From Octopus sinensis (lineage: Eukaryota), in the NCBI RefSeq assembly GCF_006345805.1, contig NC_043009.1:10602001-10666000 (forward strand): DNA of 64,000 nt. The letters run 5' to 3'. The stretch's first letter is position 1, and each line of letters starts with the position of its first letter. Positions 12,417 through 33,970 of the stretch are shown here, in pieces. The translations under genes and the position numbers were made by a program. The notes below the pieces were generated by a model. That model ran no database searches and had not been told where the DNA came from. It saw only the letters and a list, made by a program, of their open reading frames with translations.

Positions 12417-15400
12417 CTATGTGACATATCGGTTCCAATAGTTTCGTAGATTTTTAGTGTAATAATCGTAATTATTCTTGAAATATTGTGCTGTATTTTG
12501 TACCTGCGTGATATAACTATTATAATAATTGCGGTATGAGTTATAATATTGACGGAAATTAGTTGCTGTTGTAGACTTTGCTTGATCAAACATTGAGGAA
12601 AATCTAAGTACCACTCTCGTGTAAGTTTTTCTAAGAAGCAATTGGGACTTTTTGTAAGCTTTTTGCGCTCCTAACCAAGCATTGTTCCACAACCTACGTA
12701 TGCCTTGTTTTCTGTTTGTTGCAGGTTGGTACAATCTATTTGTTATTTGATTTACTCCCCTCCACAAGTTAGAAAGCCTAGTCAAAGTTCTCTGAAATAT
12801 GCGCTGGTTCTTTCGATAAATTTTCACGATAACATTCTTTCCGTAATGATAATAGGGTTTTGCCGTAGACACGACTTTGAAGGTTGTCGCGGAATTTCCA
12901 GGGTGTATAATCTTCTTATCCACATGTGTTTTGTTTTCGTACTTGAAAGTGGTTAAGGAACTTTTTGTTGTAGTTAATGTGGTGGATGTGGTTGTTGGTA
13001 ACTGCTTCGCTGGTCGACATACCTTAAGTTTTAATGTTTCCAGTTGCTTATGGCCAACAGAACCGGAATTTGGATTTGGTTGCTGCGCAGCGGCTTTCCT
13101 AACAGTCGCAGGTTTTATAACCAATACAATGCACGTGGATTTAAACTGGTGAACACTTAACCAATTAAAATTGAAAAACAGTCTTAATCTTCGTTGTACC
13201 CAATTAACAATCATCTTCGTGATGAAGAATGTATACTTGTGCTTGGGTGGAATTATTGCAGTCATAGACTTCGACAACCAAGATATGGAAGAAGCAATAT
13301 CTGTCGCCACTAACTTTTTAGATGACTGATCTGGAAATTTGAACATTGATAATTTGTTTACTATCCAGCACAATCGTTTTGATAACTTCTGAGGATTTCT
13401 AATTTTATTGGCATTTGCAACCGTTTTCAGAATTTTAATTCTGACAGAAATACAAACTTTGATAGATGGTTTCATAGTCGCTTTTATTTTGCTGGGTCGA
13501 GTTGAAATTGTCGAAGATGGGAGAGTTGTTAGCATCTTTGTTGTCGCTGTTGTAATTTCTTTTTCAGGAAGTTTTGTTGTTTCATTGGAAATACTGTAGG
13601 ACAATGATGTGGCCCTTGTTCTGTCAGAAGCAATGGGACCTATTTTTGCTGTGGCATTTTGAATAGAAATCGTTCCTGCACTGGAGATATATTGGTTAGC
13701 CAAAGTCACGCTAGGCGTTGTATCGTGAATAGCGAATTGGGTTGTGCGGAAATCAGAATCAGCTTCTATACTTTTCGGTCTGTAAGTTGTAATATTAATA
13801 ATCTTCGACATTAGTGTTGTGGTAATATGATCTGAACTATATATAGTAGCATTGGTATTACTGATTATTGATTCAGTTAAGTTATAAATATTGCTCTTAT
13901 CAATAAACTCTGCAGTCCTGGAGACTTCATCGGTTATATTTGCTTTAGAACTGGATGAAGCACTACTTTCGGTTGTATAGCTTAATTTATCAGTCGTGTA
14001 CTCTCTAGAGAAATCTGTGATATTCTCTGATTTCGACGGGCCTTTTTCTGTTGTTGTATTGAATTGATCGATGAAATCTTCAGTAAATAGAAAATGATCT
14101 GTCGGCTGCCTCTGTGATGAATGTGACATTGTTGCTTCTGGTGTTTGGGAAGATATATCTGTTCGGTTAATCTCAGTCGATGTAGTTATATCTTCAGATA
14201 CATAATAACCTGAAACTTTTGCGTCAGTAGACAGAGTTGATGAAGTGATATCTGATTCTACTGGTGCAACACTGCTAATATTGGTTGTTAAATGATCAGA
14301 TGTTGAAATTTTGTAACCGAACACTAATGTTACATTTTCTGTTTCTGTTTCATTGATTCCGAATGAGGTCTTCTCCATTAATTTGGTTACATCGCCTTCT
14401 GTTCCAAGACGAGTGTGTTGTATATTCTGTGATGTTGAGTCTGATCTTACCGTTTCACCTGTTGTTACACTGTCAGTACTATCTTTAATTGGTGTAAATG
14501 ATATTGTAGTATTTGCCGGTATATGTGTAGAGTATTCGTCTTGTGTTATATTAGTTGTAAGAAAGAGAGAGGTTGTTGTTGTTGGTTGAACAGACGATAC
14601 ATTGGTATCTGTTTCGTTTTCTCCAACAATAGTAACACTGCTGGTTACAGTTTCTGTAATATTGTCAAGGTAAGGTACGAACCGACTTACCTCTAATGAT
14701 GATTGAGTCGATATGTTTGTTGATTCCGTTGTAAATAAAACTTCGGTTCTAAGTTCTTTTCCTTCCTCTGTTGACATTTTACTTGTATTGTAGTCAGTTG
14801 CACTGTATCCAGTGTAATTGCTCACGCTACTTACAGATTGTGTTTCCAATAGTTTAGTGAAATCTGTGCTGGTTTCTTGAGATGTCTGAATTGTAACGTT
14901 TTCAACCCAACTGTCTGGCGTTTCAATACGAGTGCTCGTTGGTTCTGTAGCAGGATATATAGTTTTCCCCTCCTGAATCGAAGAAAAAGTGTTTGAAGAC
15001 TGTGTAATGGCTGGAACGGAACTGGTATCACGAGACGATTCAGATGGTAATGAGATTGCTTCGACTGTTTTCGTATCAGTATAGAATATTTCGTCGTCTT
15101 TGCTTATTGTGCTGGTCTGTAATGTAGTAGAACTTTCAACGGTTTGGTTTAATTTATCAGTCGTGTACTCTCTAGAGAAATCTGTGATATTCTCTGATTT
15201 CGACGGGCCTTTTTCTGTTGTTGTATTGAATTGATCGATGAAATCTTCAGTAAATAGAAAATGATCTGTCGGCTGCCTCGGTGATGAATGTGACATTGTT
15301 GCTTCTGGTGTTTGGGAAGATATATCTGTTCGGTTAATCTCAGTCGATGTAGTTATATCTTCAGATACATAATAACCTGAAACTTTTGCGTCAGTAGACA

Positions 15401-18400
15401 GAGTTGATGAAGTGATATCTGATTCTACTGGTGCAACACTGCTAATATTGGTTGTTAAATGATCAGATGTTGAAATTTTGTAACCGAACACTAATGTTAC
15501 ATTTTCTGTTTCTGTTTCATTGATTCCGAATGAGGTCTTCTCCATTAATTTGGTTACATCGCCTTCTGTTCCAAGACGAGTGTGTTGTATAATCTGTGAT
15601 GTTGAGTCTGATCTTACCGTTTCACCTGTTGTTACACTGTCAGTACTATCTTTAATTGGTGTAAATGATATTGTAGTATTTGCCGGTATATGTGTAGAGT
15701 ATTCGTCTTGTGTTATATTAGTTGTAAGAAAGAGAGAGGTTGTTGTTGGTTGAACAGACGATACATTGGTATCTGTTTCGTTTTCTCCAACAATAGTAAC
15801 ACTGCTGGTTACAGTTTCTGTAATATTGTCAAGGTAAGGTACGAACCGACTTACCTCTAATGATGAATGAGTCGATATGTTTGTTGATTCCGTTGTAAAT
15901 AAAACTTCGGTTCTAAGTTCTTTTCCTTCCTCTGTTGACATTTTACTTGTATTGTAGTCAGTTGCACTGTATCCAGTGTAATTGCTCACGCTACTTACAG
16001 ATTGTGTTTCCAATAGTTTAGTGAAATCTGTGCTGGTTTCTTGAGATGTCTGAATTGTAACGTTTTCAACCCAACTGTCTGGCGTTTCAATACGAGTGCT
16101 CGTTGGTTCTGTAGCAGGATATATAGTTTTCCCCTCCTGAATCGAAGAAAAAGTGTTTGAAGACTGTGTAATGGCTGGAACGGAACTGGTATCACGAGAC
16201 GATTCAGATGGTAATGAGATTGCTTCGACTGTTTTCGTATCAGTATAGAATATTTCGTCGTCTTTGCTTATTGTGCTGGTCTGTAATGTAGTAGAACTTT
16301 CAACGGTTTGGTTTAATTTATCAGTCGTGTACTCTCTAGAGAAATCTGTGATATTCTCTGATTTCGACGGGCCTTTTTCTGTTGTTGTATTGAATTGATC
16401 GATGAAATCTTCAGTAAATAGAAAATGATCTGTCGGCTGCCTCGGTGATGAATGTGACATTGTTGCTTCTGGTGTTTGGGAAGATATATCTGTTCGGTTA
16501 ATCTCAGTCGATGTAGTTATATCTTCAGATACATGGTAATCTGAAACTTTTGCGTCAGTAGACAGAATTGATGAAGTGATATCTGATTCTACTGGTGCAA
16601 CGCTGCTTATATTGGTTGTTAAATGATCAGATGTCGAAATTTTGTAACCGAACACTAATGTTACATTCTCTATTTCTGTTTCATTGATTCCGAATGAAGT
16701 CTTCTCCATTAATTTGGTCGCATTGTCTTCTGTTTCATGACTAGTCTGTCGTGTTACACTATCAGTAAAATCTTTAATAGGAGTGAATGACACCGTGCCA
16801 TTCGGAGCTGTATGTGTAGAGTATTCTTCCTTTGTTTCAGCAGTTTCAGGAAAGAGAGAAGATGTGGATGTTGATTGAGTTGGTGACACACTAAAATATG
16901 TTTCATTTACTCCTGTAGTAATTACGCTACTGGTCATAGTTTCTTCGCCACCTTCTTTGCTTGATGTTTTACCCTGAAAAGCCGATGTAACATTATCAAG
17001 GAAAGGTACGAACCGAGTTAGCTCAGATGAAGATTCAATCGAGGTGTTTGCTACATCTATAGTAAATAAAACTTCGGTTTTAAGTTCTTTTCCTTCCTCT
17101 GTTGACATTTTACTCGTGTCGTAGTCTGTTGCACTGTATCCAGTGTAATTTCTCAAGCTATCTACAGATTGTGTTTCCAATAGTTTAGTGAAATCTGTGC
17201 TGGCTTCTTTAGATGTCTGAATTGTAACGTTTTCAACCCAACTGTCTGGTGTTTCAATACGAGTGCTCGTTGGTTCTGTAGCAGGATATATAGTTTTCCC
17301 CTCCTGAATCGAAGAAAAAGTTTTTGAAGATTGCGGAATGGCTGGAACGGAACTGGTATCACGAGACGATTCAGATGCTATTGAGATTGCTTCGACTGTT
17401 TTCGTATCAGTATAGAATATTTCGTCGTCTTTGCTTATTGTCCTGGTCTGTAATGTAGTAGAACTTTCAACGGTTTGGTTTAATTTATCCGTGGTGTACT
17501 CTCTAGAGAAATCTGTGATATTCTCTGATTTCGACGGGCCTTTTTCTGTTGTTGTATTGAACTGATCGATGAAATCTTCAGTAAATAGAAAACGATCTGT
17601 CGGCTGTCTCTGTGATGAATGTGACATTGTTGCTTCTGATGTTTGGGAAGATATATCTGTTCGGTTAATCTCAGTCGATGTAGTTATATCTTCAGATACA
17701 TAATAACCTGAAACGTTTGCGACAGTAGACAGAGTTGATGAAGTGATATCTGATTCTACTGGTGCAACGCTGCTAATATTGGTTGCTAAATGGTCAGATG
17801 TCGAAATTTTGTAATCGAACACTAATGTTACATTTTCTGTTTCTGTTTCATTGATTCCGAATGAGGTCTTCTCCGTTACTTTGGTCGCATCGCCTTCTGT
17901 TCCAAGACGAGTCTGTTGTATAGTCTGTGACGTTGAGTCTGATCTTACTGTTTCACCTGTTGTTACACTGTCAGTACTATCTTTAATTGGTGTAAATGAT
18001 ATTGTAGTATTTGCCGGTATATGAGTAGAGTATTCTTCTTGTGTTATACTAGTTGTGAGAAAGAGAGATGTTGTCGTTGGTTGAACAGACGACACATTGA
18101 AATCTGTTTCGTTTTCCCTAGCAGTAATAGTTTTGTCTAAAACACGGGTTGTAGATATATTTGTTCTGCTAATTTCAGTCAATTCAGTAACATCCTCAGA
18201 TACATAATAGTCTGGAAGTCTTGTGTCTGTAGCCTTTGATGGGATTGTTGTGTCAGAGGTTGTATCTGTGTGAAATTCTTTTGTGACTGGTGGAGATCTT
18301 GATGTCTTCGCGGCTGTAACATTTAATTTTACTTTCAGTGTAGAATCTGACGTGAATGTACTTGCTTCAGAAAGATGTCGAGATGTTGTCGTAGCTGTTG

Positions 18401-33830: not shown

Positions 33831-33970
33831 CTGCTTACTCTTCCTTTGAGGTTTATGATTTTCCATGCAAAGTGTCTCTCTACTTTAATATAGGACGACA
33901 TATAATCTACTCTTTGGAAGACATCCACGTCAGCATAATCCCAAACCGCTATCTTCAAATTCAATAGTGA
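33831..33970 (-). CDS. Exon A of a Delta/Serrate-like gene: C-terminal half of the N-terminal C2 (MNNL) domain
   Basis: Acceptor ttttcacttacag| and donor AG|gtgagt, phases 0 and 2. Encodes SLLNLKIAVWDYADVDVFQRVDYMSSYIKVERHFAWKIINLKGRVS. The first 11 aa align with Jagged RSYTLLVEAWD, which from memory also follows a phase-0 intron. Confidence 0.8.

What the first reader, a model, noticed from the sequence alone, without database searches (positions are those of the whole stretch)
12417..33970. Notch-ligand head fused to a giant mucin with no membrane anchor
Seen: four exons splice in frame into C2/MNNL(part)-DSL-cbEGF, then ~1600 aa of S/T/E-rich mucin and a ~350 aa basic tail ending at a stop. 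There is no ~20-aa hydrophobic helix and no GPI-type C-terminus. Established: canonical Delta/Serrate ligands have many EGFs, a transmembrane helix and an endocytosed tail needed to pull on Notch; soluble DSL proteins are known in C. elegans. Inference: a secreted ligand or decoy held in mucus or matrix by its tail, or a Notch-ligand module co-opted as a glycan/lipid-binding head of a structural mucin. I do not recall this architecture having been described.
Basis: partly seen in the sequence, partly recalled or inferred. Interest (0 to 1): 0.85.

Follow-up and report, generated by a model that had tools for sequence, protein, structure and literature searches.

The report
Anchorless octopus Delta-like mucin-type gene
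This is a real, conserved octopus gene joining a worn-down Notch-ligand head to a giant sugar-coated stalk and a basic tail with no membrane anchor; it belongs to a small undescribed cephalopod family and is probably a matrix or mucus protein, not a working Notch ligand.

Summary
The window is Octopus sinensis chromosome CM016871.1. Four minus-strand exons (33970-33831, 29700-29564, 27154-27032, 18526-12417) join in frame through GT-AG sites. They give C2(part)-DSL-one cbEGF, a 1,680-aa acidic S/T-rich region of about 3.5 tandem 389-aa units, and a 350-aa basic tail. No transmembrane or GPI signal is present. The giant exon supplies the EGF's sixth cysteine, and Argonauta keeps this junction.

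Public gene models in four octopods fuse the same parts (RefSeq XP_036364437.1 'mucin-5AC'; UniProt 'Delta-like protein'). A 2021 survey already listed its DSL domain. One further coding exon lies 61 kb upstream, outside the window. The annotated start sits mid-C2 and has no signal peptide, so the 5' end is unresolved.

The tail is a conserved domain with no known fold. It is shared with a head-to-head paralogue (LOC115218507: signal peptide-MNNL-DSL-6 EGF-S/T-tail) and with decapod transcripts. Four of the five Notch-contacting DSL residues are replaced, DOS-type EGFs are absent, and Argonauta deletes the GH core. A canonical ligand is therefore unlikely. A secreted, glycosylated matrix or mucus protein is the best reading. 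This is a new variant of a known kind, of moderate interest.

The parts
33831..33970 (-). Exon A (140 nt): C-terminal strands of the C2/MNNL domain (SLLNLKIAVWDYADVD...NLKGRVS). It starts in phase 0 and ends after 2 nt of a codon.
   Evidence: The acceptor is ttttcacttacag| and the donor is |gtgagt. It aligns to octopus Delta1 'SFSLIIEAWH...' and to the paralogues. It is identical to residues 40-86 of XP_036364437.1. An Argonauta homologue lies at L006 7174-7359.
29564..29700 (-). Exon B (137 nt): last C2 strand plus most of the DSL domain (MFLQLKMYCNQNYYGSTCKTYCIPTNSEKGHYKCDKNTGRKKCYT).
   Evidence: Pfam DSL PF01414, E 7.6e-10, above the curated cut-off. GT-AG sites are present. The DSL plus EGF are 95.7% identical to O. 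bimaculoides.
27032..27154 (-). Exon C (123 nt): end of the DSL (GWTGENC) plus cysteines 1-5 of a single calcium-binding-type EGF ([34 protein letters not shown]).
   Evidence: Pfam EGF, E 1.5e-05. The cbEGF, Asx-hydroxylation and O-fucose patterns are matched. The best PDB matches are DLL1 EGF7 and Notch cbEGFs, not ligand EGF1-2. The donor is acag|gtaact.
12417..18526 (-). Exon D (6,110 nt including the stop codon at 12419-12417): sixth EGF cysteine, S/T-rich region, C-terminal domain and stop.
   Evidence: It is the minus-strand ORF 12417..18536. The acceptor is ttcttctttttgttaatag|G. The junction reads ...PPERTG|TTCDI, which closes the EGF. The same junction occurs in Argonauta as PPGRTG|TTCDM.
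18099..18524 (-). EGF cysteine 6 plus a unique S/T-rich linker (residues 174-315 of the 2,208-aa protein).
   Evidence: The linker is 77% identical to O. bimaculoides.
13977..18098 (-). Tandem array of about 3.5 units of 388-389 aa (1,165-1,167 nt), acidic, S/T-rich and sequon-rich. Unit boundaries are near 16932, 15768 and 14601.
   Evidence: k-mer offsets are 389/388/777/1166. The units were aligned. Self-matches are 93-98% identical at the DNA level. dN/dS between units is 0.36-0.60. TRF missed the array because the period exceeds 500.
13470..13976 (-). Non-repeated S/T-rich segment between the array and the tail (residues 1690-1858).
   Evidence: It is 85.6% identical to O. bimaculoides.
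12420..13469 (-). Conserved C-terminal domain (350 aa). It has an alpha/beta subdomain with conserved Cys/Trp residues, a short S/T linker, an N-x-T-H motif, and about 150 aa of basic Tyr/Asn/Arg-rich long helices ending in YW.
   Evidence: An HMMER search of 1.84 billion representatives found 9 proteins, E 5e-206 to 1e-05, always at their C-termini. Alignment A1 has 35 invariant columns. The AF2 model has mean pLDDT 57, with the N-subdomain at 75-85. There is no Pfam, PDB-sequence or fold match.
13331..13594 (-). An in-frame 264-nt GT..AG segment inside exon D. The O. sinensis RefSeq model removes it and the O. vulgaris model keeps it, so it is a candidate alternative intron.

Best explanation
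**What it is.** The region is the 3' four-fifths of a real octopod gene. The gene encodes a protein with no membrane anchor that is very probably extracellular and heavily glycosylated.

**Parts, from N to C.**
- A Delta-derived head: the second half of a C2/MNNL domain as annotated, a DSL domain and one calcium-binding-type EGF.
- A stalk of about 1,680 aa that is acidic, S/T-rich and rich in N-glycosylation sequons. Tandem duplication of a 389-aa unit has expanded it.
- A 350-aa basic C-terminal domain: a Cys/Trp-containing alpha/beta module followed by long Tyr/Asn/Arg-rich helices.

**Origin (shown in part, inferred in part).** The gene is one of two old cephalopod paralogues that lie head to head. 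Its sister, LOC115218507, keeps a signal peptide, MNNL, DSL, six EGFs, a shorter S/T stalk and the same tail. This gene most likely arose by losing the internal EGF exons and inflating the stalk. The one junction I could check, EGF exon to giant exon, is phase-1 (one base of the Gly codon before the intron).

**Mechanism (inferred).** The protein works as a matrix-, mucus- or secretion-embedded glycoprotein. The basic aromatic tail (+61) holds it in place or makes it self-associate, for example with polyanionic glycans or with its own acidic stalk (-126). The stalk acts as a hydrated spacer. The conserved DSL-EGF head is a binding module whose partner is probably no longer Notch in the canonical way.

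**Open point.** The 5' end, with any signal peptide and the first half of C2, is not in the window and is not resolved in public models.
For: **Gene and splicing.**
- The splice sites are canonical, the frame is kept, and the EGF is completed only by the giant exon.
- The O. vulgaris coding sequence rebuilt with these exon borders translates exactly to CAI9731589.1. The O. sinensis one differs from XP_036364437.1 only by an 88-aa internal segment.
- The exon order and the EGF-to-giant-exon junction are conserved in Argonauta genomic DNA.

**Family.**
- The tail search returned only mollusc proteins, and the match is always at their C-termini.
- LOC115218507 (XP_029644226.1) lies about 51.7 kb away, head to head, on the same chromosome.
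- In that paralogue the last exon also carries an EGF end, the S/T region and the tail.
- A 4,974-nt RNA-seq contig encodes an uninterrupted 1,144-aa protein running signal peptide-DSL-EGFs-S/T-tail. Head and tail therefore sit on one mRNA in this family.
- No member has a hydrophobic segment beyond the N-terminal signal peptide.

**Secretory route (indirect).**
- All 12 head cysteines are conserved.
- There are 64 sequons against 24 expected from composition.

**Selection.**
- DSL+EGF is 95.7% identical between O. sinensis and O. bimaculoides, against 77-86% elsewhere in the protein.
- Between O. sinensis and O. vulgaris, DSL+EGF shows 0 non-synonymous and 2 synonymous changes.

**Against canonical Notch signalling.**
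- The Jagged-1 residues F199/R201/R203/D205/F207 are Y/I/T/S/K here. Octopus Delta1, Delta2 and Jagged keep R/R/D and F or L (residues from PMC3415683).
- The EGF resembles deep cbEGFs, not DOS-type EGF1-2.
- The Argonauta DSL lacks E-K-G-H.
Against: - No transcript or protein data for this gene itself were available. Every gene model I saw is computational.
- The annotated protein starts MKSCGIGKY..., with no signal peptide and only half a C2 domain. I found no 5' exon in the 10 kb upstream, in intron 1, or in the far 10 kb next to the paralogue.
- If that start is real, the protein would be cytosolic and the extracellular reading would fail.
- The tail shows no clear constraint between O. 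sinensis and O. vulgaris (2 synonymous, 7 non-synonymous changes), though the counts are tiny.
- The anchoring or self-association role of the tail is inferred from charge and composition only. The AF2 model is of low confidence, and its fold search gave nothing significant.
- Loss of the Jagged-type DSL face lowers the likelihood of Notch binding but does not exclude it.
Confidence: 0.6

Rival explanations
1. It is a secreted or matrix-tethered Notch ligand or decoy. The DSL-EGF head still binds Notch. Because the tail and stalk fix it in mucus or matrix, it can either resist the receptor's pull and activate Notch, or act as a soluble competitor.
For: The DSL domain passes Pfam's cut-off, and the C2-DSL region aligns to solved Notch ligands. 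The head is the most conserved part of the protein. The EGF carries an O-fucose site and calcium-binding residues, as in Notch-pathway EGFs. Secreted one-EGF DSL ligands exist in C. elegans (PMC3415683).
Against: Four of the five residues of the conserved receptor-binding face are replaced non-conservatively, while the canonical octopus ligands keep them. There are no DOS-type EGFs. The N-terminal half of C2, which forms the second Notch contact, is absent from the model. The Argonauta ortholog has lost the GH core of the DSL. Lophotrochozoans carry many divergent DSL genes with no link to Notch signalling shown (PMC8166818).
Confidence: 0.2
2. It is a decaying or non-functional duplicate. An inverted partial duplication of the LOC115218507-type gene lost its promoter-proximal exons (signal peptide and first half of C2) and most EGFs. 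The long ORF persists but has no conserved function.
For: The annotated start lies inside C2, 10 nt after an AG acceptor that matches the paralogue's exon 2/3 boundary, and no upstream exons were found. The tail gives dN/dS of about 1 between O. sinensis and O. vulgaris. There is a DSL deletion in Argonauta.
Against: An intact ORF of more than 2,000 codons is kept in three Octopus species, and the same architecture is kept in Argonauta. DSL+EGF is under clear constraint. All splice sites are kept in O. vulgaris, where the rebuilt coding sequence translates exactly to the deposited protein, and the exon C donor and exon D acceptor are kept in Argonauta too. The repeat units show dN/dS of 0.36-0.60. 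The tail is 59% identical to Argonauta and 40% identical to Sepia, with 35 invariant columns.
Confidence: 0.12
3. It is a gene-model artefact. The DSL/EGF exons and the 6.1-kb ORF belong to different transcripts, and automatic pipelines fused them because they are neighbours on one strand.
For: All models are computational. The O. bimaculoides model has a transposon-derived false N-terminus. The O. sinensis and O. vulgaris models disagree about an internal 264-nt segment.
Against: The EGF is incomplete without the first codons of the giant exon, and the giant ORF's frame opens right at a strong acceptor. The junction is conserved in Argonauta with an intron of only about 1.3 kb. The paralogue has the same last-exon layout, and a decapod transcript contig joins head and tail. 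No other EGF or transmembrane-like exon is visible on the minus strand between 27032 and 18526, or downstream of 12417.
Confidence: 0.05

Closest known systems
Octopus sinensis LOC115218507 (XP_029644226.1, UniProt A0A6P7T2R3 'Delta-like protein') with its Argonauta ortholog GAB1601704.1 and its decapod relatives (P0013/P0031 transcripts)
   Same: They share the conserved C-terminal domain, a DSL followed directly by a cbEGF of the same type, an S/T-rich stretch before the tail, one large last exon, and no transmembrane helix. This paralogue lies head to head about 52 kb away on the same chromosome.
   Different: The paralogue has a signal peptide, a full MNNL domain and 6 to about 10 EGFs, with an S/T region of only a few hundred residues. 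The window's gene has one EGF, a 1,680-aa stalk of 389-aa repeats, and no annotated signal peptide or first half of C2.
Canonical Delta/Serrate/Jagged Notch ligands (octopus Delta1 XP_014769856.1, Delta2, Jagged; human DLL1, JAG1)
   Same: There is homology from the C2 end through the DSL (28% identity over 167 aa to octopus Delta1, E 8e-19; PDB matches). The six DSL cysteines and the GHY core are shared.
   Different: The window's gene has no transmembrane helix, no cytoplasmic tail and no DOS-type EGF1-2, and it has one EGF instead of 5-16. The receptor-binding DSL face is replaced. It has a giant S/T region and an unrelated C-terminal domain.
Secreted DSL proteins of C. elegans (DSL-1 type: DSL plus one EGF, no membrane anchor)
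   Same: The layout is the same: a DSL domain, a single EGF, no DOS motif and no transmembrane helix (PMC3415683).
   Different: The origin is independent, because this gene derives from a multi-EGF cephalopod family. It is about ten times larger, with a glycosylated stalk and a conserved tail. Notch activity is untested, and the receptor face is not kept.
Gel-forming mucins such as MUC5AC (the name NCBI gives the gene)
   Same: It has a long, tandemly repeated, S/T-rich and probably heavily glycosylated central region.
   Different: It has no VWD, C8, TIL or cystine-knot domains. It has 3.5% Pro and 36% S+T, so only 8 of 1,582 windows meet a PTS-type composition. The repeat unit is 389 aa. 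The name reflects low-complexity similarity only.
Non-canonical DSL genes of lophotrochozoans (138 genes surveyed in PMC8166818, for example scallop XP_021376117.1)
   Same: The DSL type is the same, 'C-I-P-x-N-x-x-K-G-H-Y' with a one-residue insertion after C-D-K. It is 55% identical to the scallop and snail examples. This gene's DSL is itself in that data set.
   Different: The survey did not describe this domain architecture, the missing anchor or the C-terminal domain. The bivalve expansions are DSL-only tandem arrays.

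Membership tests
Canonical DSL Notch ligands (Delta/Serrate/Jagged) | DSL domain with six cysteines and the G-H-[YF] core | tested here: met
   Pfam PF01414, 39.3 bits against a cut-off of 24.2. Aligned.
Canonical DSL Notch ligands (Delta/Serrate/Jagged) | Conserved receptor-binding face of the DSL (human Jagged-1 F199, R201, R203, D205, F207) | tested here: not met
   The residues are Y, I, T, S, K here. Octopus Delta1, Delta2 and Jagged keep R, R, D and F or L. 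The residue list comes from PMC3415683.
Canonical DSL Notch ligands (Delta/Serrate/Jagged) | Signal peptide and complete N-terminal C2/MNNL domain | tested here: inconclusive
   Only the second half of C2 is encoded, by the annotated first exon plus exon A. There is no signal peptide in the models. Homology and an AG acceptor just upstream of the Met suggest missing exons, but none was found in the sequence I held.
Canonical DSL Notch ligands (Delta/Serrate/Jagged) | DOS-type EGF1-2 after the DSL, and 5-16 EGF repeats | tested here: not met
   There is a single EGF of calcium-binding type. Its best matches are DLL1 EGF7 and Notch cbEGFs.
Canonical DSL Notch ligands (Delta/Serrate/Jagged) | Transmembrane helix and cytoplasmic tail for endocytic pulling | tested here: not met
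   The highest 19-residue hydropathy is 0.97, and the protein ends ...YWNRYVT. The same holds in all relatives.
Canonical DSL Notch ligands (Delta/Serrate/Jagged) | Binds and activates or inhibits Notch | not testable with these tools
   This needs binding and reporter assays.
Cephalopod anchorless DSL-EGF-S/T-rich proteins with the conserved C-terminal domain (unnamed; LOC115218507-like) | C-terminal domain of about 350-500 aa with conserved C, CW, W, N-x-T-H and a Y/W-rich helical end | tested here: met
   phmmer E 4.5e-21 to 1e-122 against paralogues and orthologues. Alignment A1 has 35 invariant columns.
Cephalopod anchorless DSL-EGF-S/T-rich proteins with the conserved C-terminal domain (unnamed; LOC115218507-like) | DSL followed directly by a cbEGF, an S/T-rich region and tail in one last exon, and no transmembrane helix | tested here: met
   
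Cephalopod anchorless DSL-EGF-S/T-rich proteins with the conserved C-terminal domain (unnamed; LOC115218507-like) | N-terminal signal peptide plus MNNL | tested here: inconclusive
   Both are present in P0032, P0011 and P0013/P0031. Neither was found for this gene.
Gel-forming mucins (MUC5AC-like) | VWD-C8-TIL assemblies and a C-terminal cystine knot | tested here: not met
   No such Pfam hit on the 2,039-aa ORF. The central region has no cysteines.
Gel-forming mucins (MUC5AC-like) | PTS-type composition (about 40% or more S+T with 5% or more Pro; thresholds from memory) | tested here: not met
   8 of 1,582 100-aa windows qualify. Overall it is 35.9% S+T and 3.5% Pro.
Secreted DSL proteins of the C. 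elegans DSL-1 type | DSL plus one EGF, no DOS motif, no membrane anchor | tested here: met
   This is a likeness of layout only, because descent is from a cephalopod multi-EGF family.

The most novel reading that the evidence does not exclude
Cephalopods have a family of anchorless DSL proteins whose conserved basic C-terminal domain fixes them in extracellular matrix or mucus. A matrix-held ligand would then supply the resistance that membrane ligands supply by endocytosis. This gene would be the extreme member, a Notch (or other EGF-receptor) ligand presented on a micrometre-scale glycosylated tether.
Probability: 0.08. Interest if true: 0.85.

Novelty: new variant of a known kind. Interest (0 to 1): 0.45.

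Why it matters
If the reading is right, the Notch-ligand head (C2-DSL-EGF) has been reused in cephalopods as the end module of secreted, heavily glycosylated proteins that carry a so-far undescribed C-terminal domain.

That gives a clean natural case of exon loss plus repeat expansion turning a signalling-type protein into a probable structural one. It also flags a new mollusc-restricted domain, with no Pfam, PDB-sequence or fold match, that is worth characterising.

For Notch biology it matters mainly as a caution. Database names such as 'Delta-like protein' or 'mucin-5AC' describe neither the architecture nor the likely function. DSL-gene counts in lophotrochozoans include members that have lost the receptor-binding face.

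It would matter much more if the head still engaged Notch from a matrix-anchored position.

Tried and rejected
- **Tandem Repeats Finder** found nothing, because the repeat period (1,167 nt) exceeds its limit. I used k-mer offsets instead.
- **The word-indexed protein search** with the head alone and with head plus linker did not return even the identical RefSeq proteins. Its silence is therefore not evidence that transcripts are absent. Only the search with the giant exon found the orthologues.
- **Searches for the missing 5' exons** all came back negative. I also used two cysteine-motif scans. The second scan did recover the paralogue's exon as a positive control.
- **Argonauta and Sepia loci** did not reach far enough upstream.
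- **AlphaFold models** were of low confidence: tail pLDDT 57, head pLDDT 52. The tail's fold search gave no hit below E 0.1. The head's gave Jagged-1, DLL4, DLL1 and Serrate at E 2.5e-4 to 3e-3, but with poor superposition.
- **A SEA-like or apolipoprotein-like reading of the tail** was considered and dropped for lack of any match.
- **The 'mucin-5AC-like' protein in the octopus ink proteome** (PMC10142993) is a different, membrane-spanning protein.
- **dN/dS over the repeat array between species** was discarded because the arrays are out of register.
- **Accession-number searches** of the literature found nothing.

Full report
**Source and observation**

The window is 100% identical to Octopus sinensis chromosome record CM016871.1 (assembly GCA_006345805.1). 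Window positions 2417-64000 equal locus L001 positions 102900-41317 reversed.

On the minus strand there is a 2,039-codon open frame at 12417-18536. At this base composition the chance of that is about 1e-64.

Upstream of it lie three short exons with pyrimidine-rich AG acceptors and GT donors, at 33970-33831, 29700-29564 and 27154-27032. An acceptor at 18526 opens the big frame. Joined, the four exons read through 2,169 codons to one stop.

Exon B is a DSL domain (Pfam PF01414, E 7.6e-10, above the curated cut-off). Exon C is the end of the DSL plus an EGF.

The solved structures that match are Jagged-2, Serrate, Delta, DLL1 and DLL4, from the last part of the C2 domain through the DSL. The donor of exon C cuts the EGF after its fifth cysteine. 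The first codons of the giant exon (G|TTCDI) supply the sixth.

**Composition**

- The central 1,682 residues are 35.9% S+T, 14.4% D+E and 3.5% Pro. They contain no cysteine and 64 N-x-S/T sequons, against 24 expected from composition.
- This region holds about 3.5 tandem copies of a 388-389-aa unit. dN/dS between units is 0.36-0.60.
- The last 399 residues carry a net charge of +61.
- No 19-residue window exceeds a hydropathy of 0.97, and the C-terminus is hydrophilic. There is therefore no transmembrane helix and no GPI-type signal.

**What public records say**

A search with the giant exon returned three proteins:
- XP_036364437.1 'mucin-5AC' of O. sinensis (2,120 aa; UniProt A0A7E6FBU9 'Delta-like protein').
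- CAI9731589.1 'mucin-5AC-like' of O. vulgaris (2,208 aa).
- XP_014785705.1 of O. bimaculoides (1,611 aa).

All three carry Pfam DSL. Rebuilding the O. vulgaris coding sequence with my exon borders gives exactly the deposited protein. The O. sinensis protein differs only because RefSeq removes an in-frame 264-nt GT..AG piece (window 13594-13331) inside the giant exon.

The O. sinensis and O. vulgaris models have one more coding exon, MKSCGIGKYVTNTIKSNNIDFQNIKDLHNPMKFRIKQRH. It lies about 61 kb upstream of exon A, outside the window. The O. bimaculoides model instead begins with a transposon-derived piece that lies in the intron at 31933-31648, which is an artefact.

The DSL of this gene is in Supplementary Data 2 of a 2021 survey of 138 lophotrochozoan DSL genes (PMC8166818). 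It appears there as Obi_XP_014785705.1 and Ovu_XP_029644311.1. I infer that the latter is the earlier accession of this very locus, because the paralogue's accession from that paper now belongs to O. sinensis. The paper does not mention the mucin-like architecture. Searches by accession number and by concept found no paper that describes it.

**A family, not a singleton**

I searched the last 400 residues with HMMER against 1.84 billion representative proteins. Nine proteins matched, all at their C-termini. Their sources are given:
- The Argonauta hians ortholog (GAB1601705.1: DSL, one EGF, S/T region, tail).
- A Sepia pharaonis relative.
- One gastropod protein, from Batillaria.
- A second clade: O. 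sinensis LOC115218507 (XP_029644226.1), O. vulgaris CAI9731592.1, A. hians GAB1601704.1, and decapod sequences.

Members of the second clade have a signal peptide, an MNNL-type N-terminus, a DSL, 6 to about 10 EGFs, an S/T-rich stretch and the same tail. None has a transmembrane segment.

One of them is encoded without interruption on a 4,974-nt RNA-seq contig. Head and tail are therefore on one mRNA in this family.

LOC115218507 lies head to head with the window's gene. Their start codons are about 51.7 kb apart. Argonauta shows the same head-to-head arrangement, though the two genes lie much further apart there (about 145 kb from the paralogue's start to the ortholog's DSL exon).

In the paralogue the last large exon also begins by closing an EGF and then runs through the S/T region and the tail. 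Argonauta genomic DNA keeps the exon order A-DSL-EGF-giant exon and the junction PPGRTG|TTCDM, with an intron of only about 1.3 kb. The fusion is therefore old and real, not a pipeline accident.

**The tail**

An alignment of eight tails from both clades has 35 invariant columns. These include two Cys, several Trp, an N-x-T-H motif and a periodic Tyr/Phe/Trp pattern at the end.

AlphaFold with this alignment gives an alpha/beta N-subdomain (pLDDT 75-85 in parts) and two long helices. The overall pLDDT is only 57. Foldseek against the PDB, a profile search of PDB sequences, and Pfam all find nothing significant. It is an uncharacterised domain, restricted as far as I can see to molluscs.

**The unresolved 5' end**

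- The annotated Met lies in the middle of the C2 domain. It aligns with an internal Met of the paralogues: SSSM(D/N)xCEFG against (Q)SNMKSCGIG.
- The homology continues three codons upstream, to an AG acceptor at the same place as the paralogue's exon 2/3 boundary.
- The ancestral exons for the signal peptide and the first half of C2 are therefore either unannotated or lost.
- I could not find them in the 10 kb upstream in two species, in the 61-kb intron, or in the 10 kb next to the paralogue. The same scan did find the paralogue's own exon.
- 31.7 kb between the two genes was not available to me.
- Twelve conserved head cysteines and the 2.6-fold excess of sequons argue that the protein passes through the secretory pathway. 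I put the chance that a signal-peptide exon exists at roughly three in four. This is inference.

**Is it a Notch ligand?**

The five residues of the Jagged-1 DSL face that are needed for trans-activation and cis-inhibition are F199, R201, R203, D205 and F207 (review PMC3415683). In this gene they are Y, I, T, S and K. Octopus Delta1, Delta2 and Jagged keep R, R, D and F or L.

The single EGF is of the deep calcium-binding kind, not the DOS-type EGF1-2 that follows the DSL in canonical ligands. The first half of C2 is missing from the model. Argonauta has an in-frame genomic deletion of E-K-G-H in the DSL.

Even so, DSL+EGF is the most conserved part of the protein. It is 95.7% identical between O. 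sinensis and O. bimaculoides, against 77-86% elsewhere. Between O. sinensis and O. vulgaris it shows no non-synonymous and two synonymous changes. The head is doing something, but probably not canonical Notch binding.

**Most likely mechanism**

Shown: the architecture, the lack of an anchor, the family, the conservation pattern and the loss of the receptor face.

Inferred: the protein is secreted and heavily glycosylated. It sits in matrix, mucus or a glandular secretion. The basic aromatic tail holds it there or makes it self-associate, and the acidic stalk is a hydrated spacer. The head binds a partner that remains to be found.

The gene most likely arose from the LOC115218507-type ancestor by loss of internal EGF exons and by repeat expansion. 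The one junction I could check is phase-1. The Sepia relative has independently built a region of more than 2,300 aa from a 41-aa repeat.

The rivals are a matrix-tethered Notch ligand or decoy (about 0.2), a decaying duplicate (about 0.12) and a model artefact (about 0.05).

**Comparison with known kinds**

- It works like a secreted glycoprotein with a terminal binding module.
- It is homologous to Delta-type ligands in its head, but it fails most of their defining features.
- Its layout resembles C. elegans DSL-1 (DSL, one EGF, no anchor), by convergence.
- It is not a gel-forming mucin: it has no VWD, C8, TIL or cystine knot, and only 8 of 1,582 windows reach PTS-type composition.
- It is a clear member of the unnamed cephalopod family defined by the C-terminal domain.

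**Verdict**

The gene is already catalogued but not characterised. Divergent DSL genes are common in lophotrochozoans, and the receptor face is gone, so the surprise is moderate.

What is new is the family with its undescribed tail domain, and the route by which a ligand-type gene became a giant stalked protein. I rate it a new variant of a known kind, with interest about 0.45.

Noticed in passing
window 59273-60632 (minus strand): Two adjacent ORFs of a LINE-type retrotransposon lie inside the gene's 61-kb intron, in the gene's orientation. The first matches Pfam RVT_1 at E 9.5e-28.
   Followed up: partly
window 31648-31933 (minus strand): Transposon-derived ORF pieces in the intron between exons A and B are what the O. 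bimaculoides RefSeq model XP_014785705.1 uses as its N-terminus. That is an annotation artefact, and it entered the published DSL alignment as flanking sequence.
   Followed up: yes
window 26999-27031 (minus strand): Reading through the exon C donor gives G-NSC-KDESKFL-stop. This would also close the EGF and end the protein, so it is a possible short intron-retention isoform. It is present in O. sinensis and O. vulgaris and is not conserved in Argonauta.
   Followed up: partly
window 13331-13594 (minus strand): An in-frame 264-nt GT..AG segment inside the giant exon is removed in the O. sinensis RefSeq model and kept in the O. vulgaris model. It removes the start of the conserved C-terminal domain, including its first two conserved cysteines.
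   Followed up: partly
window about 54950-55135, 32359-32481, 32073-32246, 11656-11865, 11482-11601, 11341-11424: Copies of a short interspersed repeat are present, with translation ..RAKCVAVFRLPLRSEFKFRRGRLAFHPFGVDKLSTSYALG... A second repeat family (..[29 protein letters not shown]..) lies near 61921-62154, 53527-53751, 47299-47631 and 10385-10708. No tRNA or Rfam match was found in the window.
   Followed up: no
L006 9971-10123 (Argonauta hians BAAFZT010000020.1): The Argonauta ortholog's DSL exon has an in-frame genomic deletion of four residues (E-K-G-H). This removes the G-H core that is nearly invariant in DSL domains.
   Followed up: partly
L008 1863-10816 (Sepia pharaonis CAHIKZ030001272.1): The cuttlefish relative of this gene has more than 2,300 aa of S/T-rich ORFs built from a repeat of about 41 aa, directly upstream of the conserved tail. 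The ORFs are broken into three frames, by assembly errors or by introns. Whether a DSL head precedes them could not be seen.
   Followed up: partly
L003 10001-107887 (O. sinensis CM016871.1:10748984-10846870, plus strand): The paralogue LOC115218507 lies head to head with this gene. O. vulgaris has two further gene models (CAI9731590 and CAI9731591) numbered between the two genes, which I could not retrieve.
   Followed up: partly
window 22318-22647, 24167-24565, 27475-28025 and many others: Dense (TA)n/(CA)n-type microsatellites produce the long 'YIYIYI' and 'CVCVCV' pseudo-ORFs that appear in the mechanical ORF list.
   Followed up: no
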